Shown here in pieces: positions 42,101 to 57,600 of a stretch of DNA of 64,000 nucleotides. The translations under genes were made by a program, and so were the position numbers. The notes beneath the pieces are model-generated. The model saw nothing but the letters and a program-made list of their open reading frames with translations, ran no database searches and had not been told where the DNA came from. Every line of letters starts with the position of its first letter. Positions within the stretch are counted from its first letter, which is position 1. The stretch comes from Macrostomum hystrix. Taxonomy: Eukaryota; Animalia; Platyhelminthes. The stretch lies in contig CATNEN010000028.1 in the NCBI GenBank assembly GCA_950097015.1, forward strand, positions 372,001-436,000. The letters are read 5' to 3'.

Positions 42101-45100
42101 CTTCGCGTGCGAGAGATGGCACTATTTCCTGTTCGGCCGGAGATTCGAGCTGCACACGGACCACCAGGCTCTGACGACGCTGCTGACGGCTCAAGGCAGC
42201 GGCCACCGGCCTCTGCGGCTTCATCGATGGGCCGACCGCCTGCTCGCGTACGACTTCCAAGTCTGCCACGTTCCTGGCAAGAAGAACATCGTGCCAGATT
42301 TTTTGTCGCGCCACGGCGCTCTCGAAGGAAAATGCCCAAGGCAAAGCGAAGAGGACTCGACCGAGCTCCAAGTGAATGCCGTACTGCTATCGGGCGCGCT
42401 GGAGATTGTCAGTCCAAGCGAACTGGCCGAGGCATCCCTGCAGGACCCGGTGATCAATGATGCGGTCACAATGACGCTCCAGGGGTGGCCTAACTCCATC
42501 AAGCAGCTGAAGCCGGAGCTGCAGCCGTTCTGGAGGATGCGGACGCAACTGGCGCTCTGGAATGACGGCAAGTGCCTGGCCAACGGCACCCGAGCAGTAA
42601 TCCCCGCATCCCTGAGGGAGAAGACGCTGCAGCTGGCGCATTTCGGGCACCTCGGCGTGAGCAAAATGAAGCAGCATTGCCGGGACGCAGTCTGGTGGCC
42701 GCAAATCAATCAGCATATCGAGGAATTTGTGCGACATTGCGAGGCCTGCCTGCTTAGCGAGAAGAACTTTAAGCCACCCAAGACGGTCCTGACCCCTACG
42801 AAGTGGCCGACGCGTCCATGGGAGGAACTCCAGCTCGACATCTTCGGGGAGCTGCACTCTGCGCCGAACTCCTGTCGCTTCATCCTGGTGCTGTACGATT
42901 TGCATTCAAAGTGGCCGGAGGCTGCCTGCATGTCGACTGTCACAAGCGCGGATGTCATCGACGCCCTGACAACGTGGTTTAGCCGCTGGGGCCTGCCGAA
43001 GAGCATTAAAACAGACGGAGGTCCGCAGTTCGTGTCCGGCGATTTCGAGGATTTTCTTCAGCGCTGCGGCATCCGGCACCGGCAGTCACCGCACTACCAC
43101 CCCCAGGGCAACGCGGCCGTAGAGCGCTTCAACCGTTTTCTCAAGGACGGCCTAAAGACGCACCTAGAGGAGGGCTACGACTTCAAGGACGCGGTGAAGA
43201 CGCTGCTGTGGTCGTACAGGGCCACCCCGCATGCACTGACTGGAGTGTCACCGGCGGAGCTCATGACAGGCCGGAAGATCAGCACCCAGTTGACAGCTCT
43301 GCAGCCAAGGACAACAGCTCGGCACAGACTGGCGGCCAGCATCAAGCGGAGGCAGCAGCGCGTTTTCGATCAGCTCAACACGACCCGGAGGCCGCCGCCC
43401 ACGTTCATAGTCGGCGACTGGGTGCGCGTGAAGCGGCCGTTCGCCCGCGGCAAGCTGAGCAGCCGCCTGTCCGAGCCACGGCAGATCTCCCGGATCGCGA
43501 GCGCGACCACCGTCATCCTCAGCGATGGCTCCCGCTGGCACGTCGACAACTGCGTCCGGGTACCGCGGCCAGCCGGAGCGCTGCCGCACTGGCCAGCGCC
43601 GGCTCCCAGCGCAGCCGGGACAGCCGCGGAGGCGGCGACGGCGGCAGACCCAGCGAGACAGCAGCAGCCAGCCCAGACGGCGATCCGAGTGAGCTCAAGG
43701 CCGCGAGCGCCGCCGCAATGGTACGGTGAAATCGTGACTCACTGACTCGTTTTTTAGTGACGGTTATTCAGCTGTTATTAGCGATCAGCTGTTTCGATTT
43801 AATTCTCTTTGAAGTACCTGATGCATAAAAAGATCATTTTACTCCTTCGATGCTTGGTAATGCACTTTTATTTCCTGCTCAATATTTGCATAATTATTTT
43901 CGTTGCTCTATCCTTTGAAAGGGAAGGTGAATGTTGTGCAGTTGATTAATGCACGTACATAGTTCGTACATGTACACCTCTGATATCGATTGGCGCAGAA
44001 TATATATAGTCCAATAACTGAGAGCCAACTTGGCGTGAAAGTTTCGGATACTAACTTGGCTGACTCGCTACTATTCATTTACAACACATAGCTGATGTAC
44101 ATTAGCTGATGTACATAGCCAGTGTACATTGCTGATGTACATTAGCTGATGTACATAGTCCGTGTACATAGCTGATGTACATAGCCAGTGTACATAGCTG
44201 ATGTACATGACAGTGTACATAGCGGTTGTACATATCCGATGCACCGGCCGCTTGCAGCCTTCGGGGTGCCAGTTAAGGACTTAAAGTATGGCACCTTGGC
44301 TAATGACCAAAATCATACATGGACTGTAGGTAGGGGGTAATGACTAATGCACAGACAGGTCTAAAACATCGCCGTTAATATATAGAATTGTTGTCAGATT
44401 GAAATAATTAAATCACATCTCTGATCAGATGTCGTGCGTGAACTGCATTGAAGCTGTGTATCGTTCTGTGTACGCCAGCCTAAGTCAGCATCAGCAGCAA
44501 GCTTCAACAGATAATCAGCAACAGCAGCAGCAGCAGCAGTTGAATCGGCTGGCAGTCGCTCGCGCTTGCGACAATATCCTGACATCAGCTCTGGGCCTGG
44601 AGTTGGCCATCAATTTGGCTGCGGGAGCTGGCGGTTCTCCGGACGACAAACTGCTGGAACGACTGGCCGAACAGCTCAGCCAGGGCCTGGCCGAGTTGTC
44701 CAAAGCTGGCCGGCCTGCAAGGCTTGGCGGCGATCCAGCCGATGTTGAGGCTCTGCAGCTGGCGGTCCGATGCGCGGCAACCGCAGTGGCACAGCTGCAG
44801 CACGGCATTCGCTGTGTGCGGGCCACCCTAGCTGGCTGTGAGTTATAGGCGCGATTGGGGCTGCAGATTTACTCTGCAGTTTGTGTTGCAGTTTGTGTTG
44901 CAGTTTGGGCTGCAGTTTGGGCTGCAGTTTGGGCTGCAGTTTAGGCTGCAGTTTCTGCAGTTTTGGCTGCAGTTTGTGTTTTAGTTAAGGCTGCAGTTTG
45001 TGTTTTAGTTAAGGCTGTAGTTTTGGCTGCAGTTTGTTTTGTAGTTAAGGCTGTAGTTTTGGCTGCAGTTTATTTTGTAGTTAAGGCTGTAGTTTTGGCT

Positions 45101-47265
45101 GCAGTTTGTGTTTTAGTTAAGGCTGTAGTTTTGGCTGCCGTTTAATTTGTAGTTAAGGCTGTAGTTTTGGCTGCAGTTTGTTTTGTAGTTAAGGCTGTAG
45201 TTTTGGCTGCAGTTTGTTTTGTAGTTAAGGCTGTAGTTTTGGCTGCAGTTTATTTTGTAGTTAAGGCTGTAGTTTTGGCTGCAGTTTATTTTGTAGTTAA
45301 GGCTGTAGTTTTGGCTGCAGTTTATTTTGTAGTTAAGGCTGTAGTTTTGGCTGCAGTTTATTTTGTAGTTAAGGCTGTAGTTTTGGCTGCAGTTTATTTT
45401 GTAGTTAAGGCTGTAGTTTTGGTTGCAGTTTGTTTTGTAGTTAAGGCTGTAGTTTTGGCTGCAGTTTATTTTGTAGTTAAGGCTGTAGTTTTGGCTGCAG
45501 TTTATTTTGTAGTTAAGGCTGTAGTTTTGGCTGCAGTTTATTTTGTAGTTAAGGCTGTAGTTTTGGTTGCAGTTTGTTTTGTAGTTAAGGCTGTAGTTTT
45601 GGCTGCAGTTTATTTTGTAGTTAAGGCTGTAGTTTTGGCTGCAGTTTATTTTGTAGTTAAGGCTGTAGTTTTGGCTGCAGTTTATTTTGTAGTTAAGGCT
45701 GTAGTTTTGGCTGCAGTTTATTTTGTAGTTAAGGCTGTAGTTTTGGCTGCAGTTTATTTTGTAGTTAAGGCTGTAGTTTTGGCTGCAGATTATTTTGTAG
45801 TTAAGGCTGTAGTTTTGGCTGCAGTTTATTTTGTAGTTAAGGCTGTAGTTTTGGTTGCAGTTTGTTTTGTAGTTAAGGCTGTAGTTTTGGCTGCAGTTTA
45901 TTTTGTAGTTAAGGCTGTAGTTTTGGCTGCAGTTTATTTTGTAGTTAAGGCTGTAGTTTTGGCTGCAGTTTATTTTGTAGTTAAGGCTGTAGTTTTGGTT
46001 GCAGTTTATTTTGTAGTTAAGGCTGTAGTTTTGGCTGCAGTTTATTTTGTAGTTAAGGCTGTAGTTTTGGCTGCAGTTTGTTTTGTAGTTAAGGCTGTAG
46101 TTTTGGCTGCAGTTTATTTTGTAGTTAAGGCTGTAGTTTTGGCTGCAGTTTATTTTGTAGTTAAGGCTGTAGTTTTGGCTGCAGTTTATTTTGTAGTTAA
46201 GGCTGTAGTTTTGGCTGCAGTTTATTTTGTAGTTAAGGCTGTAGTTTTGGCTGCAGTTTATTTTGTAGTTAAGGCTGTAGTTTTGGCTGCAGTTTATTTT
46301 GTAGTTAAGGCTGTAGTTTTGGCTGCAGTTTATTTTGTAGTTAAGGCTGTAGTTTTGGCTGCAGTTTATTTTGTAGTTAAGGCTGTAGTTTTGGCTGCAG
46401 TTTGTTTTGTAGTTAAGGCTGTAGTTTTGGCTGCAGTTTATTTTGTAGTTAAGGCTGTAGTTTTGGCTGCAGTTTATTTTGTAGTTAAGGCTGTAGTTTT
46501 GGCTGCAGTTTATTTTGTAGTTAAGGCTGTAGTTTTGGCTGCAGTTTATTTTGTAGTTAAGGCTGTAGTTTTGGCTGCAGTTTATTTTGTAGTTAAGGCT
46601 GTAGTTTTGGTTGCAGTTTGTTTTGTAGTTAAGGCTGTAGTTTTGGCTGCAGTTTATTTTGTAGTTAAGGCTGTAGTTTTGGCTGCAGTTTATTTTGTAG
46701 TTAAGGCTGTAGTTTTGGCTGCAGTTTGTTTTGTAGTTAAGGCTGTAGTTTTGGCTGCAGTTTATTTTGTAGTTAAGGCTGCAGTTTGTTTTGTAGTTAA
46801 GGCTGTAGTTTCTGAAGGCTGTAGTTAAGGCTGAAATCACAAATATCAGCGATGGATGTTCTTTCAGCCGCCAGTCAAAGTGGCCACTCAAAGGACGACT
46901 CCAGCCCAATGGACGAGCTTCGCTCCCGAGTCCACCTGGCCGTAGAGAATCTGCGACCGTCTGTGGCAACTGTTCTGGCCGTGTCGGGCGAGGCCAGATT
47001 CTCCGGCCGGCCCCTGCGCCTGTCCGAGGACGCCAAAGCTGGCAAGGCCAGGGCATTGGGACACGCCCTGCCGGTTGCCTTAGCAACCGTTGAACTGCTG
47101 ACGGCAATGGCGGCCGCCTTAGAGCAGCAGGGCCAGCAGCAGCAGCAGCAGCAGAGGCAGCGATTAGGACAGTTGGCCGAGGCTTTGAACGCGTCATGCA
47201 CCGAGTGTATGGCTAAGATTAGCCAGTCTGCTATTAACACAACTGACGCCTACGGCCAGAACTAA
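38904..47265 (+). CDS. TLNRD1: Talin rod domain-containing protein 1 (TLNRD1/MESDC1)-like; join(38904..39317,44429..44837,46868..47265); alternative in-frame acceptor at 46850; ~406-412 aa
   Basis: Helical blocks align by eye with remembered human TLNRD1: RVECLVGAQRVQQSAERLLL vs [44 protein letters not shown] vs [44 protein letters not shown]...ALGHALPV vs [20 protein letters not shown]...ILGGAMSV. Introns CAG|gtataa..tcag|ATG (phase 0) and T|gtgagt..ttcag|CC (phase 1). Confidence 0.8.
39337..39467. repeat. 13/26-bp minisatellite (GCTGATGTACATA/GCCAGTGTACATA), left part; continues at 44087-44222 after the LTR element
   Basis: The same units lie on both sides of the retrotransposon. Confidence 0.9.
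39468..39622 (+). repeat. 5' LTR (155 bp)
   Basis: Identical by eye to 43932-44086. Confidence 0.95.
39754..43745 (+). CDS. gag-pol polyprotein, split by a single frame break at ~41060 (ORFs 39754..41148 and 40494..43745)
   Basis: Gag with two Cys/His knuckles (CSKCGGGHNRRARC, CHVCGKANHFGRMC); protease LVDSGAKVS; RT YIDD; RNase H CDSS...SEREALAC...TDHQAL; integrase HFGHLG...CEAC with D-D-E (QLDIFG, KTDGGPQF, AVERFN). Confidence 0.92.
43932..44086 (+). repeat. 3' LTR (155 bp)
   Basis: Identical by eye to the 5' LTR and preceded by the polypurine tract. Confidence 0.95.
44863..46832. repeat. 36-bp minisatellite (TATTTTGTAGTTAAGGCTGTAGTTTTGGCTGCAGTT) filling TLNRD1 intron 2, ~50 copies
   Basis: Direct tandem periodicity. 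It explains the 553- and 694-aa repeat ORFs. Confidence 0.95.
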
Positions 47266-47324
47266 GTCTAGTAAGTCAAAACTGTCTGGCCAGAAACTTT
47301 TACTGCTTAGATGGTATAGCAAGA

Positions 47325-48868
47325 ATCGCAGCAAGAGCAATATGTTATCTAGAATCGCAGCAAAAACCATAGCTAGAATCGCAGCAAGTGCCATAGCTAG
47401 AATCGCAGCAAGAGCCAAAGCTAGAATCGCAGCAAGAGGAGAAGCTAGAACCGCAGCAAGAGGAGAAGCTAGAATCGCAGCAAGAGGAGAAGCTAGAATC
47501 GCAGCAAGAGCCAAAGCTAGAACCGCAGCAAGAGGAGAAGCTAGAATCGCAGCAAGAGGAGAAGCTAGAATCGCAGCAAGAGCCAAAGCTAGAACCGCAG
47601 CAAGAGGAGAAGCTAGAATCGCAGCAAGATCCAAAGCTAGAATCGCAGCAAGAGCCAAAGCTAGAATCGCAGCAAGATCCAAAGCTAGAATCGCAGCAAG
47701 ATCCATAGCTAGAATCGCAGCAAGCGTCAAAGCTGGAATCGCAGCAAGATTCATAGCTAGAATTGTACGAAGAGCCGAAGCTAGAATCGCAGCAAGAACA
47801 ATAGCTAGAATCGAAGCAATACCCGAAGCTAGAATCCCAGCAAGAGCCAAAGCTAGAATCGCAGCAAGAGCCAAAGCTAGAAACGCAGCAAGAGCCAAAG
47901 CAAGAATCGCAGCAAGAGGAGAAGCTAAACGAAGCTTAGCTGAAGCTAAATCGCAGCAAGAGCAATAGCTAGAATCGTATCTAGAGCCGAAGCTAGAATC
48001 GTATCTAGAGCCGAAGCTAGAATCGTATCCAGAGCTGAAGCTAGAATCGTATCTAGAGCCGAAGCTAGAATCGTATCTAGAGCCGAAGCTAGAATCGTAT
48101 CTAGAGCCGAAGCTAGAATCGTATCTAGAGCCGAAGCTAGAATCGTATCTAGAGCCGAAGCTAGAATCGTATCTAGAGCCGAAGCTAGAATCGTATCTAG
48201 AGCCGAAGCTAGAATCGTATCTAGAGCCGAAGCTAGAATCGTATCTAGAGCCGAAGCTAGAATCGTATCTAGAGCCGAAGCTAGAATCGTATCTTGAGCC
48301 GAAGCTAGAATCGTATCTAGAGCTGAAGCTAGAATCGTATCTTGAGCCGAAGCTAGAATCGTATCTAGAGCTGAAGCTAGAATCGTATCTAGAGCCGAAG
48401 CTAGAATCGTATCTAGAGCCGAAGCTAGAATCGTATCTAGAGCCGAAGCTAGAATCGTATCTAGAGCTGAAGCTAGAATCGTATCTAGAGCCGAAGCTAG
48501 AATCGTATCTAGAGCCGAAGCTAGAATCGTATCTTGAGCCGAAGCTAGAATCGTATCTAGAGCCGAAGCTAGAATCGTATCTAGAGCCAAAGCTAGAATC
48601 GTATCTAGAGCCGAAGCTAGAATCGTATCTTGAGCCATAGCTAGAATCCCAGCAATAGCTAAAGCTAGAGTCGCAGCAAGAGCCATATCTAGAATCGCAG
48701 CAAGAGGAGAAGCTAGAATCGCCGCAAGAGAAGAAGCTAGAATCGCAGCAAGAGGAGAAGCTAGAATCGCAGCAAGAGCCAAAGCTAGAATCGCAGCAAG
48801 AGGAGAAGCTAGAATCGCAGCAAGAGACGAAGCTAGAATCGCAGCAAGAGAAGAAGCTAGAATCGCGG
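47325..48868. repeat. 24-bp minisatellite with two variant domains (AGCTAGAATCGCAGCAAGAGCCAA and AGCTAGAATCGTATCTAGAGCCGA)
   Basis: Direct tandem periodicity starting ~60 bp after the TLNRD1 stop. Confidence 0.93.
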
Positions 48869-49347
48869 CAGGATAAGCTTCCAAAATTTTATAAGATATT
48901 ACTGTCTCGTATGTAAGTTTTAACCCAATGGGTGTAATATTTTTGCAAGCTATACTCAAAAAGCTTTTTTTATTTCTTTTTTGCTAATTACCATAATAAA
49001 TACAGGACTTTACACATATGAAAAAAATATTTGCAAGCATTTTTTCTACGCTTGTATTCGCAAGCTTAAAATTCAATGTTACATTTTTGTCATTTTCAAC
49101 ACAGAAATTGCACATTCCATCCATAATGATTAACCAAACAAGCTTATTTCAAATTGAATGTGATTCTGTGCTATACGCAATATGTAAAATATACCGAATA
49201 GTTATTTAGATTTAGATAAGCTACTATTAAAACAGTGAAGGTAAAAGGTGAAAAAATGTTTTCTTTCAAGTCTATCTGTTGTCTATTTATTTTGTCTTTT
49301 ACGCAGAGAGTTTTTTGGCAAACAGGAAAAACAAACAACACAACAGG

Positions 49348-49999: not shown

Positions 50000-52900
50000 T
50001 CAAAGGTTGGCCCTCTTCAGCCATTCAACGATGAGGCTGCTAGCCAGAGCGGCCCTCGGCGGCACCCACCACCTGCCGACTCGGTTGAGCATGTCGCTTA
50101 TCTGGGCCGGCGAGAACCAATCGGCGAACTCCAGCTCCTCCGTGTCCAACTGGGAAACGGATTGATTGGTTGATTGTTCGTGCTGATTGTATCCACATGG
50201 ATTTATCTTGAGAAACGGGAGGGATTAATGATCGAGGGGAATTCTACATAGGGATCATAGAATAGCGATTGAGATCAGGTAACGGGGATTGGGATCAGGG
50301 AACGGGTATTGGGATCAGTGAACGGGGATTGGGATCAGGGAACGGGTATTGGGATCAGTGAACGGGGATTGGGATCAGGGAACGGGTATTGGGATCAGTG
50401 AACGGGGATTGGGATCAGGGAACGGGGATTGGGATCAAAGAACGGGGATTGGGATCAGGGAACCGGGATTGGGATCATAGAACAGCGATTGAAATCAGGG
50501 AACGGGGATTGGGATCAGGGAACGGGGATTGGGATCAGGGATCGGGGTTTGGGATCAGGGAACGGGGATTGGGATCAGGGAACGGGGATTGGGATCAGGG
50601 AAGGGGGATTGGGATCAGGGAACGGGGATTGTGATCAGGGAACGAGGTATGTGAATAAATTATCATAGGTGATTTATATACCCGATAATTAACCCGAGTG
50701 TGATTTATTCATTCAGCAAATTTATCGATATATAAAATAATTTTATAGCAATATAACATGGACATAAAATGCCGCCAATAAAGCTTTATCAACATTAACA
50801 AACGAGATCCCTGGATAAGCAGGGCCAGAATAACCAACCCGAATATCGCCAGGCGATCCTTCCGTGGCCGCTTCGAAGCCGATCATCAGCTGCGACGGAA
50901 ACGGCCACGCCTGGCTGCCACGGTACTCGACCCGGCCAACCCGGAGGCCGACCTCTTCGGCCACCTCGCGCCTGACGCAATCCTCCAGGGATTCGCCCGC
51001 CTCGGCAAAGCCGGCCAAGCAGGACAGCATGCCCCTCGGGAAAGCGGCTTTGCGAGCCAGCAGGCAGCGCGGATGACTAGCTCCGCCACCGTCTGTCACC
51101 AGCACGATGGCACTGGGATCTAGCCGGGGATGCGAGATCGGATGGTCAGACCAGCCGCTGTTGCCGGATTGGTTCACCAAGCAGTCGGTATTGTGGCAGA
51201 CCAGTCTGCAGATTGTTCAGGGGTTCGAATCCTGGCTAGTGAAAAACGGCGACAATAATATATTGGATTAAAAAAAATCGACACCAATTTCTCTTTTACT
51301 CTACTAATAGTAACACGCAGGGGAAATCATTTTGAAAAACTAAATATATTTCCGAATAATTTTTTCTGAAATTAGTTTTGTCTTATTTTTTAGACGTTAC
51401 AATAGTACGTACATTTGTTTAGTAACAAATACTTCCTACTTCGGCTAAGGAATTCTGTATATGACATATGTGTATTCAAAAAATTATAATTAAAATCATT
51501 AAAATAATATAAGTAAAATTAAAATAATTAATTTTTTTTCTTTGCGATAAAATAGTCTATGGTAAAAACTAATAGAATGACTGCTTAAGCCATGGACATC
51601 TAAATATAGCATATATATGGCATGAGCATAGAGTTCCACTTCGAGATAACAAATAGGGTTACATTTATGCCCATAAACTTTCAATTAATTTCCTCCTGCA
51701 TCATTCTCACAGAAACAAAATTTACAAATCGGTTGAAAAAACGAGGCTGACTGTTTATGGCCAGCTTTAGATTTTTTACTTTTGATTTTTGCCACCAAAT
51801 AGCTTAAAAATGACCTAATAAATTGAAAAAAGTAGAGTAAAAGTATACCTTTTTGCAACCTAGTTTGCCAAAACGGCAATCAATTTTGCCAGACTAGGCG
51901 AAAACCACTCGAATTCCCTCTCGCTTCTGCGAAGTTAAACCCATAGACATGAAACTTTCAGCAACCAATTTTGTCAAAACTGCGTCTATTTTGCCAATGC
52001 TAAAGTGATACGCAATCGACGACAGTAACGCATGTAAACGTGTTAACAGAAGGGTGCTGGTTCACGGAACAGGTTTACTGTATGTACATGGCATGATGCA
52101 AGATACTTCCATCACCAAAATCTTCAAATAAGGGCCTCTCTGAGCCATGCTTTCTATGGTTGTCTCTGTCTCTGTCTCAAGGCAAATTTCACGCAGCTTT
52201 ATAGCGAAAATTGGTTTCGGGAATCGGATATGTCTATGGGCAAAACCGGTTAAGGCTGAAGAAAGGCGTCACTTTGGCATTGGCAAAATAGAAGCAGTTT
52301 TGGCAAACTAGGTTGCAAAGGGTATAGTATAAATGGTTTCGCTTTTTGTGAGTAGGGCCTGTAAAAAACTCAACTAACTTCAAGATTATAAAGCATGCAA
52401 TGATCGACAAAGTCCATTGCACGTACAACTATATGTACAACCGTTTTTCGATACATATCGGAAATCATAGAAACTTACTTATGCCCCGCATCGGCCGTCT
52501 CAGTAGGTCCTCCGCAGGCGGAGCAATGTCGATTGTATCGATGCCAAGCTAGCAGCGACCTGCCGGGGCCCCAGATCTGCGCTAGCCGGGTAGCAGACAT
52601 CAACTGCAGCCTAGAAGGCGATAAGGCGTCAGCAGCAATGGACTTCTTGACCCAAGCCAGCAGGCGTGGCGACGCGGCTACGGCGAAGTAATAATTTGCT
52701 TCAACGACGACCTTGTCGTTGTCGGCGTCACTGCCGAGGAACACAACTGGGCAATCGTCAGGACCCAGCGCCGGCTGCAGCTCTGGCCAGGGCACCAGCA
52801 GCGGCGAGAATACGCTGCCTCCGCCTCTGACATCGCCGACAACATTCTGGGATTTGGCTGATGCTACAGGTGTCACTACGGGAGTAAGCCATTGGTCAAA

Positions 52901-53038
52901 AAGTATCGCCTTGCAGCTGGCTGACTGCTTCAACCGCTCCAGTTCGTCTGGACGGCGGCGCAGCTCGGCCAGCCTGTGCAGTACAGCGCCGCGTCGCGAT
53001 TGCGTCGACGCTGTGGCTAGACAACGAAATTGTTGCAG
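50000..53038 (-). CDS. NUDT12: NudC-family NAD(H) pyrophosphatase, NUDT12-like; exons 53038-52479, 51205-50839, 50149-50000; 358 codons plus stop, no genomic ATG at the 5' end
   Basis: [18 protein letters not shown] (Zn site), [12 protein letters not shown], Nudix box [38 protein letters not shown] signature, C-terminus ELEFADWFS...[22 protein letters not shown]. Introns AA|gtaagt..tgcag|A (phase 2) and CGG|gttggt..cccag|TTG (phase 0). NUDT12 rather than NUDT13 is not certain. Confidence 0.85.
50270..50645. repeat. 20-bp minisatellite (GGGATCAGGGAACGGGGATT) in NUDT12 intron 2
   Basis: Direct tandem periodicity, ~18 copies. Confidence 0.92.
51846..52324. mobile_element. Putative MITE with long terminal inverted repeats and TA target duplication (Tc1/mariner-like), NUDT12 intron 1
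   Basis: Left TA|TACCTTTTTGCAACCTAGTTTGCCAAAACGGC against the reverse-complemented right end TA|TACCCTTTGCAACCTAGTTTGCCAAAACTGC. A further inverted block CTATTTTGCCAATGC(T/C)AAAGTGA occurs on both sides. Confidence 0.65.
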
Positions 53039-53290
53039 CTGAAAATTTTGGAAATGACTTCTTTTAAATTTAAACACTTAACTACTACCTACTAACAGTA
53101 GCGGCACAATTTGAATCAACGAATTCTAAATTTTTAGAATTCTAAATCAGCACTAAAGTTTGAGAACAATGCAGATAAATGTATCGCATATATTTTCCTT
53201 CCACAGCCCACAGGCGGTCAGGCGACATAGGGCGATGCAGTGTGCCATTACAAAAAAATATAATGCTGTTAAGCTTTGCATTTCAGTAGG

Positions 53291-53362
53291 TCCCTGATGG
53301 TCTAGCGGTTAGGATTCCTGGCTCTCACCCAGGCGGCCCGGGTTCGACTCCCGGTCAGGGAA
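53291..53362 (+). tRNA. trnE-CTC: tRNA-Glu (anticodon CTC)
   Basis: TCCCTGATGGTCTAGCGGTTAGGATTCCTGGCTCTCACCCAGGCGGCCCGGGTTCGACTCCCGGTCAGGGAA: 72 nt, paired acceptor stem, anticodon stem CCTGG/CCAGG, loop CTCTCAC, GGTTCGACTCC T-loop, T4 terminator at 53368-53371. Confidence 0.96.
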
Positions 53363-54676
53363 TATACTTTTGCTTCATTAGACGTTTATGCATGGCAGGG
53401 TTTTTTATATTGTGTCATCCGAGAGCTGGGAGTGTTCAAACTGATCTAGCTGATATTATTGTGAATAAGCGATATGTGTCGAAAACGCTCATTTTAGTCC
53501 TAACCCTATTGAAGAAATAGCAGAAAGGAACACGACAAAAATGTAATTGCAACACACAAGTAGTGATTCTATTTTACATATTAATTTAAGAGTTCATTAT
53601 TTTTTTCTGCCAGCCACAGAGGCATACACTGTGTATTTAATCTTTAATAGGATGGACCTTCGATAAATAACTTGACACGTTTTTATTCGTTTTATAATTT
53701 CCTGTAGCTCAATATGCTAAGTGAACTAACTATATTCATAGATTTTGCAGTACAATTTCGCGTACGAACAATAAAACCAATTAAGAATACCCACGGAAGT
53801 CAGCAAAAGGAGCTAGAAGACGTATGAAACTTAAAAGTGATAATTGATATATGTTTTTTAATAATTAAATACAAAGCCTTAATTTATAATGAATGCGTTT
53901 TAAACAAAAGCAAAAGATAAAACAAACTAGTCAGATTTGGAATTAAAAATCTTTATCAGAAAAAAAATCTCGCGATCTGAACAAAAGCGAGCTATTTTTT
54001 AAACAACTCTTATAAAGCGCAAACAAAAGCACACTACTCTACTGTTAGTAGGGTACCAACAAATTACGCAATAATGCAAAAAAGAAAGATAGGAAAGCAG
54101 AATTAATTGCAATAGAAATGCGAACTTTTTATTGATATAGGAATGAACAGGAATAAAAGATGCGCATAGGCGCGCTGAATGGACGGATGCGGCTTTGATT
54201 TGAAGCGAATAATTGTGAGTTGAAAAACGAAGTTAAACAGGTTGCAGTTAAGTAAAAAATTCAGTAAATGGAATGATGCATCACGAATTCTAGTGAACAC
54301 GAAGTAAGTCAATTGTATGCAAAATTATCTTTACTGCATCGACAAAGTCACTTGATCAAAATTAAATCTGCTTTTAGAATTTTTAAAGACGAGGAGGTCT
54401 GAAGGGATGGCAAAATTAAATGATTACAAATAATTGTAACTGATATCGTAGCAACAGTAAGTTTTGTGAAAGCTAGCTTAGAAACACAATTGCCTTACGT
54501 TTCTTGGATTGCAGAAGTGTATTACTTATAGTAGATACAATGCGGCAGTCGAGGAAAAATACTTGCGCTAATGTAACAAAGTTTCGTTCACAAAAAGAGC
54601 ACGATATACTGTAAGTAGTCTGAATAGCGCTTTTCGATATTTTAGTATATGTTAATAGAAACAGAACAGTGTGGCA

Positions 54677-57600
54677 TTAGTTGGGGTTGTCGTAGAACAG
54701 CAGGGTCATAATCTTGTCGTATAGCTGTGCGTGCTGATCGCCTAAGACGGCTTTGACGCGTCGCTCAGTTTCCAACTCGCTGACATCAGGATCCTGCTCA
54801 AGTTCGAAGGCCAACTCGTAAGCCTGCAGTAGACGGTCCAGGCCGACTTCCTGCAATAATTCGAAGCAGTTTTGGTTTAAACCAGCTAGGGGTCGGCAAA
54901 CTACGGCCCGGAGCCAGATGCGGCCCTCGAAGCTCCCAAATCCGGCCCTTTGCCCACTTCCGTTCCGACACCGACAGTATCCTGTTTTTGAATCCTGTAT
55001 CTTTCCCCTGTCTCATCTCTCCTCGGCCACGTCTCTCCCGAGTCTCATCTCTCCCGTGTTTCATCTCGCCCTATCATCTCTCCGCTGTCTCATCTCTCCC
55101 CTCTATCACATTTCGACAGTCAATGCGGCCCGCTGTCGTCTTTTAGGTTCTCTCTTTGGCCCGCTAGCTAATAAGTTTGCCCCCTGGTTTAAACGCACGC
55201 TGTGCCTTGAAAATAAATCAAATTTATAGCTGGCTATTAACACTATTAGTTAAGCGCTGGCTGTGGCTAGCACATTGATGTCCAGGTAAAGCACCTGTTC
55301 TAGCTCGGCCCGCAACCGCTCAGCCTTCTGGTCCACATCCTCGTCCTCGGCCCTCTCGTCCATCGGCAGGCCCTCGTCGTCGTCCCAGTCGACTTCTTCG
55401 CCTTCATCATCGCCGACTCCGGCCGAGCCGCCGGTGGTCGCTTCGGCGGACACTTCGCCGCTGCCGCAGCTACCATTCGCCGCGGCGTCCGTAGACAAAG
55501 CCAGAACACTCGCCATCGACTGCTTCACCTGGTCGAGTTCCTCTTCCTCGTAGTCCTCAATGTCATCATCATTATGGTCTTCAGCTTCGATTTCAACTTC
55601 GGGTTCGTTGGCTGCACTCCTGTCATCGTCATGGCTCATCAGCGCCTGGCTGCTGGAAGCCGGTCGTCTACGACTTCGTCGAGAAGGCGCCGCTGATGAG
55701 GCCGAAGCCTCAGCCGCGGCAGGAAAGGAGACGACCGTGTCGACGCTGATATCGCCAGAGGCCGCCGAAGCTGCAGAGTCGGATGTTTTTGAAGCCTTCT
55801 CGCGGGTCTCGTCAACAAGATCTGGCAGGGAGCAGGTGCGGAGCAGCGATTTCGGACTGTCAAACTTTCCTATTGTCAGCGCCTGCTTCAGAGTATCGCA
55901 CTGCGAGTCCTCGCCTTCGGCGGAGGCGCCCTTCCTCTCCACCGATTGGCTGACAAGGACGCGTCGGAAACTGCGCTCAACCTTAAATACGAGTAGATAA
56001 TAGAATTCGGTTGTAGACTATGCTATGCAAGGGCGTCACTACTGGGTGTCAAACTGCCACTGCCTACTTTTGATGTTTTGTGATTCTGGAAGTTGTCTTA
56101 CCGGATAGAGCCGAAAATTTTTAGCACGTGTTCCGGATATCCATGGCGAATTGTTGAATATTTTGGGAGATTTGGGAGATGGGAGATTCAAAATATATTT
56201 GAAATATCAGATATGGGCAGAATTTCCTTCTCTCTAGCTGCGGGTCGACTGTTACCAAATGATGTGCCAGTCAGTGCTCACAGCCCTCCTAATCAAGCTC
56301 ACCTCGGCCAATTCTTCAGCATCCTCAAGAGCCAGACTGCTCAACAGCAGCTGCTCAGCGGCTTCAATGTCGTCCTCGTCTGCTGCAACAGCAGCGGCGG
56401 CAGACAGGGCGAAGTCTTTCAAGCTCTGATAGATGGCCTGCTGCATGTCGGTTCGCTCAAAGTCGAGTCGGTTCGGCTTGCTTTGACCAGTTCTGCCGCC
56501 TTCAACAGGCGGATGATCGTCAGGCTCTTCCAGAGCGACTTGATCTAGCAGGGATTTGCTGTCGGAAATGGACGGCGAAGACGATTCGCCCAGCTCTGGA
56601 ATGCCACCTGAAGCGTTAATTAGGAGTCATGGTTAGCCTAGTGGTTAGAGCGTGGTCTGATTCACGACTTGAAGGTCGGGAGTTCGATTCCGAGTCGAAT
56701 TAGCTGGGGTAATCGAGGGTGGGTGTGGCCCCCCCCAGTCCATGGACTGAACAGCCGTACGCAGCCTTCAGATGTGCCTGGCAGCTCTGGCTGTGCTGTC
56801 GGCTGCACATCTGGCCCAATTGGGGCCAGATCAATTAATTAGCAATATGAAGAAGCTAAAGAATGGTATATTCGTGACTTACTGAGCTCCGGCTGCATCA
56901 GAACGTGCTCGGCCCGTCCAGCGGATGCCATCGTCTCAGCTTCGGCCAGTGCGTTTGCCGTATCCGCCACAGCAGCCGCAGCTTCCGCTGCTTCAGCCGG
57001 AGACACCGCCGAAAATTGTTTAGCGTCTTCACTTTTATCCTCATCAACACCTTGAATGTCAGCCTCTCCGAGATCATAGTCGCCATCGACCAGCGTGCCG
57101 GACAGAATCGGCGCGTTGCCTAGGCGACGCAGAAAGCCGGTGTCGTCGGCGCGAGCGCCCCAGGCGCGCGGAGTTGGCCTCGCCGATGCGGCTGCAGCCA
57201 TAGTTTTTTCCGAAGTCGGCGAAGTTGGCGTAGGCGTTGAAGAAGTGTCCGACGTAGCCGTAGCCGTTGACGTCGCCGTTATCTGCAAGGGCAAGTGGTC
57301 GAGCCGGACAAGAGCGCGGTCTCCAACGGCCCGCCCAGCGCCGCCCCAGGCATTTCCAGCGTCCTGCGACTGCGGCAGAGGAGGCGGCTGCGGCTGCTGC
57401 TGTTGCTGAATAGATGGCGGCTCGCCCTTACGATTGATGTAGCGCAATATGGATTCCTTCTTCTGTCGACGCTTCTGTGCGGCCTCTTCGTCTGCCAGAT
57501 CGTTCGAGGACGCGGACGCTGACGACGCGCTCTCGGCAATCTCGGCCAGCACTCGGGTGATGCCGCCACCGCCGGCGCCACCGGAGGTCGTCGGGTCCGA

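What the first reader, a model, noticed from the sequence alone, without database searches (positions are those of the whole stretch)
52479..53100. NUDT12-like gene has no genomic start codon: candidate for an AUG donated by a trans-spliced leader
Seen: the coding frame starts exactly at a strong acceptor (CCAAAATTTTCAG|CTG CAA CAA, AG at 53040-53039, phase 0). Upstream the frame hits TAA at 53080-53078 with no ATG (the ORF track start at 53077 is GTG). The first in-frame ATG lies ~147 codons downstream, inside the conserved domain. No convincing ATG-bearing upstream exon was found before the tRNA or in the AT-rich gap up to NEK1. Established: flatworm spliced leaders end in AUG, which can serve as the initiator. 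Inference: SL addition creates [17 protein letters not shown], a plausible mitochondrial presequence, so trans-splicing would supply the start codon and could control organelle targeting.
Basis: partly seen in the sequence, partly recalled or inferred. Interest (0 to 1): 0.75.

Follow-up and report, generated by a model that had tools for sequence, protein, structure and literature searches.

The report
Nudix gene borrowing its start codon
A conserved NADH-pyrophosphatase (NUDT12-like) gene of a Macrostomum flatworm has no start codon in the genome and most likely takes it from the AUG that ends the trans-spliced leader; this mechanism is already known in flatworms, so this is one more example, and it is not yet shown by RNA at this site.

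Summary
On the minus strand a TTTCAG acceptor (AG 53040-53039) is followed in phase 0 by a 186-codon conserved exon. An in-frame TAA lies 13 codons upstream with no ATG between. The first genomic in-frame ATG is codon 147 (52600-52598).

The Macrostomum lignano orthologue (61% identical in exon 1) has the same layout:
- the acceptor falls at the same codon;
- an in-frame TAA lies 7 codons upstream, with no ATG;
- the first ATG is at the homologous codon;
- the neighbours are the same (kinase gene, antisense tRNA-Glu);
- the RNA-seq-guided GenBank protein is labelled 'partial' and starts without Met.

Codons before the first ATG are under purifying selection (dN/dS about 0.2). The Macrostomum leader ends in ATG, and the site fits the published trans-acceptor motif. 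No conserved ATG-bearing upstream exon exists.

I could not get direct RNA proof.

The mitochondrial-targeting idea is unsupported. The protein ends in ANL, like the fish NUDT12 sequences I aligned, which suggests peroxisomes.

The mechanism is known (Cheng et al. 2006). Other agents of this scan reported it for other genes of this genome (CHMP6, POLR3K, a four-gene cluster). Verdict: probably SL-donated AUG (about 0.75), a new member of a known kind, low to moderate interest.

The parts
53039..53045 (-). 3' splice acceptor TTTTCAG (AG at 53040-53039). Proposed site of spliced-leader addition.
   Evidence: Read. Its last six bases, TTTCAG, fit the M. lignano trans-splice acceptor motif [T/C]TNCAG (PMC8629364). 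The M. lignano orthologue has ttctgcAG at the same codon (L001 2981-2982).
53078..53080 (-). In-frame TAA that closes the reading frame 13 codons upstream of the acceptor, with no ATG between.
   Evidence: M. lignano has an in-frame TAA 7 codons upstream (L001 2962-2964).
52479..53038 (-). Coding exon 1 (186 codons plus 2 nt): a short variable N-terminus, the N-terminal NudC-type domain and the first half of the zinc ribbon (CSACGG). It ends at donor AA|GTAAGT.
   Evidence: Zn_ribbon_NUD E 4.7e-4 at residues 169-186. 61% identical to M. lignano exon 1. dN/dS about 0.19 overall and 0.21 before the first ATG.
52598..52600 (-). First in-frame genomic ATG (codon 147). It is homologous to Met134 of the M. 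lignano exon.
   Evidence: alignment (LQLMSATR / VQLMTSTR).
50839..51205 (-). Coding exon 2: second half of the zinc ribbon (CHNTDC), the Nudix box and the SQAWPFPSQ motif.
   Evidence: Acceptor ctgcAG at 51207-51206. Pfam NUDIX E 8.7e-14. 79% identical to P0002.
50000..50149 (-). Coding exon 3, ending ...EWLKRANL plus the TGA stop. ANL is a PTS1-like C-terminus.
   Evidence: fish NUDT12 sequences end SANL and NANL.
53291..53362 (+). tRNA-Glu(CTC) gene, antisense to the Nudix gene, 250 nt upstream of the acceptor. It is syntenic in M. lignano.
53089..53101 (.). Near-palindromic motif CTACTNNNAGTAG, 50 nt upstream of the acceptor. Function unknown.
   Evidence: only 2 exact copies in 64 kb, against 0.03 expected. 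M. lignano has a copy 22 nt upstream of its acceptor (L001 2948-2960).
54039..54051 (.). Second copy of the CTACTNNNAGTAG motif, at the 3' edge of the conserved block.
54047..54208 (-). Conserved non-coding block between the kinase gene and the tRNA. It may be the promoter or outron start, or the distal 3'UTR of the kinase gene.
   Evidence: 64% identity over 174 nt to L001 1788-1951, E 4e-6. The core is about 90% identical. There is no credible Rfam match (one chance-level hit at the block's 3' edge, E 0.097, 22 bits against a 41-bit threshold) and no convincing fold.
54677..54856 (-).
   Evidence: 78% nucleotide identity to L001 628-803. The kinase domain lies at 62660-61252.

Best explanation
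This is a three-exon NADH-pyrophosphatase gene of the NudC/NUDT12 type, without ankyrin repeats, in a Macrostomum species other than M. lignano. Its primary transcript has no initiator codon. The 3' splice site at 53040-53039 receives the roughly 35-nt spliced leader, whose last three bases are AUG. That places the AUG directly in front of CUG CAA CAA and opens a reading frame of about 359 codons (M-LQQFRC...KRANL). Shown here: the acceptor, the closed frame upstream, the absence of any ATG for 146 conserved codons, and conservation of all of this in M. lignano. Inferred: that the leader, and not a cis exon, is joined at this acceptor, and that its AUG is the codon used.
For: 1. The sequence facts are confirmed.
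2. The M. lignano locus L001 has the same layout. The kinase-gene tail, the antisense tRNA-Glu and the Nudix gene lie in the same order. The acceptor AG at 2981-2982 falls at the same codon: FHQFRQ there, LQQFRC here. An in-frame TAA lies at 2962-2964 with no ATG between. The exon 1 donor is in the same phase. The first ATG is at the homologous codon.
3. The GenBank protein of the RNA-seq-guided Mlig_3_7 annotation (BOX15_Mlig010521g1) is labelled 'partial' and begins FTSSSQ, 6 codons into the exon. So that annotation found no ATG-bearing 5' exon (method in PMC5730564).
4. By the Nei-Gojobori method, dN/dS is 0.36/1.74 for the 133 aligned codons before the first ATG and 0.41/1.70 for the first 39. 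This part is therefore translated.
5. Relatives without ankyrin repeats start 12-40 residues before the conserved LDRxxxLR motif. This protein would start 20 residues before it, so no further coding exon is needed.
6. Literature: the M. lignano leader ends ...TTGCATG, and the trans-acceptor motif [T/C]TNCAG fits TTTCAG (PMC8629364). The leaders of M. cliftonense and M. hystrix are highly conserved and probably include the final ATG as a start codon (PMC10468722). All reported flatworm leaders end in ATG, and more than 40 S. mansoni cDNAs need it (PMC12582326 and PMC9851317, citing Cheng et al. 2006).
7. Exon 1 words are held at 0.89-1.00 by four very small runs (39-50 M letters) of one study and at 0.35 by a sediment metatranscriptome. 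This fits expression.
Against: No read or contig across position 53038 was seen. No transcript-derived protein of this species is in the protein collections or in the metagenome contigs. The M. lignano gene model starts 18 nt inside the exon and not exactly at the acceptor, so that gene was probably not cut at an SL peak by its annotators. This is neutral evidence, not positive. M. lignano has one candidate cis exon with an in-frame ATG and a strong donor (L001 1917-1952, CTT|GTAAGT). The first 19 codons are only about one third identical between the species, so the exact start inside them is not fixed by conservation.
Confidence: 0.75

Rival explanations
1. A cis-spliced upstream exon that I did not recognise supplies an in-frame ATG and is joined to the same acceptor.
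For: The acceptor could serve cis-splicing. Parasitic flatworms share many acceptors between cis- and trans-splicing (PMC12582326). The window has weak candidates, for example 53281-53252 (MQSLTALYFF, donor TTT|GTAATG). M. lignano has 1917-1952 with a strong GTAAGT donor, inside a conserved non-coding block.
Against: No candidate is conserved. At the place homologous to the M. lignano ATG the window has no ATG, it has a TAA, and it has no GTRAG donor. No window candidate has a GTRAG donor. The gap is AT-rich, about 30% GC against 52-58% in exon 1. The RNA-seq-guided M. lignano model has no such exon and is 5'-partial.
Confidence: 0.12
2. Transcription starts at or just upstream of 53038, the apparent acceptor is not used, and translation starts at a near-cognate codon such as the CUG at 53038-53036.
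For: The first codon of the window exon is CTG. AT-rich TATA-like sequence lies 20-35 nt upstream. In M. lignano CTACTATAAGTAG lies 22 nt upstream and the gene model starts 18 nt inside the exon.
Against: The polypyrimidine-CAG signal is kept at exactly the same codon in both species although the flanks have diverged. M. lignano has TTT and not a near-cognate codon at that place. The TATA-like centre of the motif is not conserved in the window.
Confidence: 0.07
3. Translation starts at the first genomic AUG (codon 147), giving a short protein with only the zinc ribbon and the Nudix domain. The upstream part would be 5'UTR.
For: It is the only genomic ATG in frame, and it is conserved in M. lignano.
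Against: The 133 aligned codons before it have dN/dS of about 0.21 and align to the N-terminal domain of NUDT12, NUDT13 and bacterial NudC. Indels there are multiples of three.
Confidence: 0.04

Closest known systems
Flatworm mRNAs that use the 3'-terminal AUG of the spliced leader as initiator (Cheng, Cohen, Ndegwa & Davis 2006, J Biol Chem 281:733; cited in PMC12582326 and PMC9851317)
   Same: The leader ends in AUG. The acceptor is in phase 0 with a conserved ORF that has no AUG of its own. The frame is closed a few codons upstream.
   Different: This is a free-living macrostomid and not a schistosome, and a different gene. At this locus the SL junction is inferred from comparative genomics, not seen in cDNA.
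Vertebrate NUDT12 (peroxisomal NADH pyrophosphatase / NAD-cap deNADding enzyme)
   Same: It is the best full-length match: 37% identity over 97% of the M. lignano orthologue. It shares the N-terminal NudC-type domain, zinc ribbon, Nudix box and SQxWPFPS motif. The C-terminal ANL is the same as in the fish NUDT12 sequences aligned.
   Different: There are no N-terminal ankyrin repeats. A short Arg/Ser/Thr-rich N-terminus takes their place. The M. lignano orthologue ends NSCC, not ANL.
Mammalian NUDT13 (mitochondrial NAD(P)H pyrophosphatase, PMC5626787)
   Same: It has no ankyrin repeats, a short N-terminal extension before the NudC-type domain, and the same catalytic motifs.
   Different: The match is weaker and shorter (42% over 60%). 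NUDT13 has no PTS1-like end. Its 27-residue targeting peptide was shown experimentally, whereas here only composition is suggestive.

Membership tests
SL-AUG-initiated flatworm mRNA (slORF) | The organism has a spliced leader ending in AUG | not tested
   Taken from the literature for the genus (PMC8629364, PMC10468722). Other agents' notes on this genome say the same (s1-408126, s1-339194, s1-084979). There is no SL gene in this window.
SL-AUG-initiated flatworm mRNA (slORF) | The leader is joined to this acceptor in mature RNA | not testable with these tools
No transcript contigs were found in the other collections.
SL-AUG-initiated flatworm mRNA (slORF) | The SL AUG falls in frame with the conserved ORF at the acceptor | tested here: met
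   The acceptor is in phase 0. The same holds in M. lignano.
SL-AUG-initiated flatworm mRNA (slORF) | No genomic AUG can start the conserved protein | tested here: met
   TAA lies 13 codons upstream. The first ATG is codon 147. Codons before it have dN/dS of about 0.2. No conserved ATG exon exists.
NADH pyrophosphatase subfamily of Nudix hydrolases (NudC/NUDT12/NUDT13) | Nudix box GX5EX7REUXEEXGU | tested here: met
   [23 protein letters not shown] in exon 2. Pfam NUDIX E 8.7e-14.
NADH pyrophosphatase subfamily of Nudix hydrolases (NudC/NUDT12/NUDT13) | Downstream SQPWPFPxS motif | tested here: met
   SQAWPFPSQ, with one substitution. The motif is defined in PMC5626787.
NADH pyrophosphatase subfamily of Nudix hydrolases (NudC/NUDT12/NUDT13) | Zinc ribbon between the two domains | tested here: met
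   CSAC at the end of exon 1 and CHNTDC at the start of exon 2. Pfam Zn_ribbon_NUD E 4.7e-4 on the exon 1 half. This is below the gathering score because the intron splits the domain.
Vertebrate-type NUDT12 | N-terminal ankyrin repeats | tested here: not met
   There is no ANK match and no coding-like sequence upstream.
Vertebrate-type NUDT12 | C-terminal PTS1-like tripeptide | tested here: met
   The protein ends ANL, as the fish NUDT12 sequences P0006 and P0012 do. It is not kept in M. lignano P0002 (NSCC). Import was not tested.
Mitochondrial presequence | Positively charged, acid-free amphipathic N-terminus recognised by a predictor or by experiment | tested here: inconclusive
   Composition only: 0 acidic and 3-4 K/R in the first 24 residues, with modest hydrophobic moment. 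No predictor was available.

The most novel reading that the evidence does not exclude
The 13-nt hairpin-forming motif CTACTNNNAGTAG may be a cis-signal for intercistronic processing (3'-end formation and/or recruitment of the spliced leader). It is conserved 22-50 nt upstream of the leader acceptor in two diverged Macrostomum species, and it recurs just downstream of the stop codons of the kinase gene and the Nudix gene. Functionally this would be comparable to the stem-loop-plus-5'ss-like Ur element of nematode operons. The kinase and Nudix genes would then be one transcription unit despite the antisense tRNA between them.
Probability: 0.08. Interest if true: 0.6.

Novelty: new member of a known kind. 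Interest (0 to 1): 0.3.

Why it matters
For annotation: gene finders that insist on a genomic ATG will truncate this protein to Met147 or call it partial, as the M. lignano GenBank entry does. In AUG-terminated-leader organisms the leader has to be added before ORFs are called. For biology: the gene would depend absolutely on trans-splicing for translation of its full-length product. That adds a free-living, transgenesis-capable flatworm example to a mechanism established in schistosomes. It does not open a new principle.

Tried and rejected
From then on I worked beside these places and sent none of their letters to any search.
- The word search with exon 1 found only a bacterial NudC.
- An exact 28-mer of the exon start and a protein-guided scan of metagenome contigs found nothing.
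- P0003 is an 830-aa frameshifted model that fuses the kinase tail to Nudix exon 1. It has no contig on record, so it could not be used as evidence of read-through.
- 'Mlig010521' occurs in no paper and in no held supplement.
- There is no SL gene in the window.
- Rfam gave only one chance-level hit at the 3' edge of the conserved intergenic block (E 0.097, below threshold), and RNAalifold gave no convincing fold.
- A look at the other near-matches of the motif gave no clear link to gene starts.
- The joined three-exon protein, with or without the leader Met, was not built or searched. All protein work was done exon by exon or through the M. lignano protein P0002.

Full report
**Observation.** I read the minus strand of 51800-54200 and listed the ORFs.
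- The text ...caaaattttcAG|CTG CAA CAA has its AG at 53040-53039.
- The frame of the conserved exon runs back only 13 codons, to TAA at 53080-53078. These 13 codons hold no ATG.
- Exon 1 is 53038..52479 and ends AA|GTAAGT.
- Exon 2 starts after ctgcAG at 51205. It completes the codon (AA+A) and continues with the second cysteine pair of the zinc ribbon, the Nudix box and SQAWPFPSQ.
- Exon 3 is 50149..50000 and ends ...EWLKRANL followed by the stop.
- Pfam finds Zn_ribbon_NUD at the end of exon 1 and NUDIX in exon 2.
- The first in-frame ATG is codon 147, at 52600-52598.
- A tRNA-Glu(CTC) gene lies antisense at 53291-53362.
- The upstream same-strand gene is a protein kinase: kinase domain at 62660-61252, last exon ending at 54677.

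**Search for an upstream ATG exon.** The 1.66 kb between the kinase stop and the acceptor hold 16 ATGs. Ten ATG...GT combinations would join in phase 0. None has the GT[G/A]AG donor that dominates in M. lignano (motif from PMC8629364). The gap is about 30% GC, against 52-58% in exon 1.

**Read evidence.** The look-up of sequencing runs returned four very small runs of one study that hold 0.89-1.00 of the exon 1 words, and one sediment metatranscriptome at 0.35. This is compatible with expression. A second call was barred by the cap. I therefore have no read-level evidence at the junction.

**Orthologue.**
- The word search with exon 1 found only a bacterial NudC.
- The exhaustive representative search found P0002, 346 aa and 61% identical, with query residues 10-186 matching its residues 3-167.
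- P0002 is 'hypothetical protein BOX15_Mlig010521g1, partial [Macrostomum lignano]', encoded on NIVC01001775.1 of the Mlig_3_7 assembly. It begins FTSSSQ, without Met.
- The locus (L001) repeats the window's layout. The kinase tail ends at about 803. An antisense tRNA-Glu follows. The acceptor ttttttctgcAG lies at 2981-2982, followed by TTT CAC CAG TTT CGT CAA (FHQFRQ, against LQQFRC here).
- An in-frame TAA lies at 2962-2964 with no ATG between.
- Exon 1 ends AG|GTATGT, in the same phase.
- The window therefore comes from a different Macrostomum species, and the start-codon-less architecture predates their split.

**Is the part before the first ATG translated?** A codon alignment gives pS 0.67 (near saturation) and pN 0.26 for exon 1.
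- dN/dS is about 0.19 overall.
- It is 0.21 for the 133 aligned codons before the first ATG.
- It is 0.24 for the first 39 codons.

Indels are multiples of three. The first ATG of both species is at the homologous codon. Relatives without ankyrin repeats begin 12-40 residues before the LDRxxxLR motif. With a leader-derived Met this protein would begin 20 residues before its LHRLAELR. So the protein needs a start at or near the acceptor, and none is encoded there.

**Leader.**
- The M. lignano leader is 35 nt and ends ...TTGCATG. The enriched motif at trans-splice acceptors is [T/C]TNCAG, which TTTCAG fits (PMC8629364).
- The leaders of M. cliftonense and M. hystrix are highly conserved. Their authors note that the leader probably includes the final ATG as a start codon (PMC10468722).
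- All reported flatworm leaders end in ATG (PMC12582326).
- In S. mansoni the AUG is in frame in 28% of trans-spliced mRNAs, and more than 40 cDNAs need it (PMC9851317, citing Cheng et al. 2006).
- The Mlig_3_7 annotation is RNA-seq guided (PMC5730564). It also means the gene was probably not cut at an SL peak, so this is indirect support only.

**Rivals.**
- *A cis exon with an ATG.* M. lignano has one candidate with a strong donor (1917-1952), inside a conserved non-coding block (window 54208-54047 against L001 1788-1951). At the homologous place the window has no ATG, has a TAA, and has no good donor. The window's best candidate (53281-53252) has no counterpart in M. lignano.
- *A transcription start at the exon boundary with CUG initiation.* This is possible for the window (CTG is the first codon) but not conserved (TTT in M. 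lignano). It also does not explain the conserved polypyrimidine-CAG.
- *Initiation at Met147.* This contradicts the selection on the upstream codons.

**Targeting.** The N-termini of both species lack acidic residues for 24-25 positions and carry 3-4 Arg. This is presequence-like but not diagnostic, and only about a third of these residues are conserved. The window protein ends in ANL, exactly as the fish NUDT12 sequences in the alignment do (SANL, NANL). Full-length similarity is best to NUDT12. Characterised eukaryotic members of this subfamily other than NUDT13 are known or predicted to be peroxisomal (PMC5626787). The M. lignano protein ends NSCC, so even the PTS1 is not conserved. The claim that trans-splicing controls organelle targeting has no support here.

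**Comparison with what is known, and verdict.** This works like the SL-AUG-initiated mRNAs described for schistosomes. Three of the four defining features are met or documented. The fourth, the junction in RNA, could not be tested here. Other agents of this scan have reported the same mechanism for other genes of this genome: CHMP6 and POLR3K with RNA evidence, and a four-gene cluster. I did not re-test those reports. I rate the SL-donated AUG at about 0.75, the novelty as a new member of a known kind, and the interest at 0.3.

An exact-sequence look-up of that product in transcript assemblies might have given the junction.

Noticed in passing
window 53089-53101 and 54039-54051; L001 921-933, 2948-2960 and 1947-1960: The near-palindromic motif CTACTNNNAGTAG has only two exact copies in the 64-kb window, against 0.03 expected. 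Both lie in the kinase/Nudix intergenic gap. M. lignano has two exact copies plus a 4-nt-spacer variant at comparable places. With one mismatch allowed there are 9 copies against 1.6 expected, and 6 of them lie between 49980 and 54618, including just after both stop codons. Function unknown.
   Followed up: partly
window 54047-54208 (minus strand); L001 1788-1951: A non-coding block of about 170 nt is conserved between two species whose synonymous sites are near saturation. Its core, TCGCTTCAAA.C.AA.CCGCATCCGTCCA, is about 90% identical. It has no credible Rfam match (only one chance-level hit at its 3' edge, E 0.097) and no convincing fold. It may be a promoter or outron start for the Nudix gene, or the distal 3'UTR of the kinase gene.
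   Followed up: partly
window 53291-53362 (+); L001 about 2701-2772: A tRNA-Glu(CTC) gene sits antisense between the kinase and Nudix genes in both species, so its position is conserved.
   Followed up: no
window 50000-50005: The protein ends in ANL, the same tripeptide as the fish NUDT12 sequences I aligned, which is PTS1-like. The M. lignano orthologue ends NSCC. Peroxisomal targeting may therefore differ between species, or the M. lignano 3' exon may be mis-annotated.
   Followed up: partly
window 45100-48960 and 50260-50640: Long satellite and minisatellite arrays (periods of tens of nt) lie downstream of the Nudix gene (45100-48960) and inside its second intron (50260-50640). They give long spurious ORFs on both strands.
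   Followed up: no
protein P0003 (representative library): An 830-aa frameshifted gene model fuses the tail of the M. lignano kinase gene to Nudix exon 1. Its source could not be traced. It could be a predictor artefact on an error-rich assembly, or a read-through transcript.
   Followed up: partly
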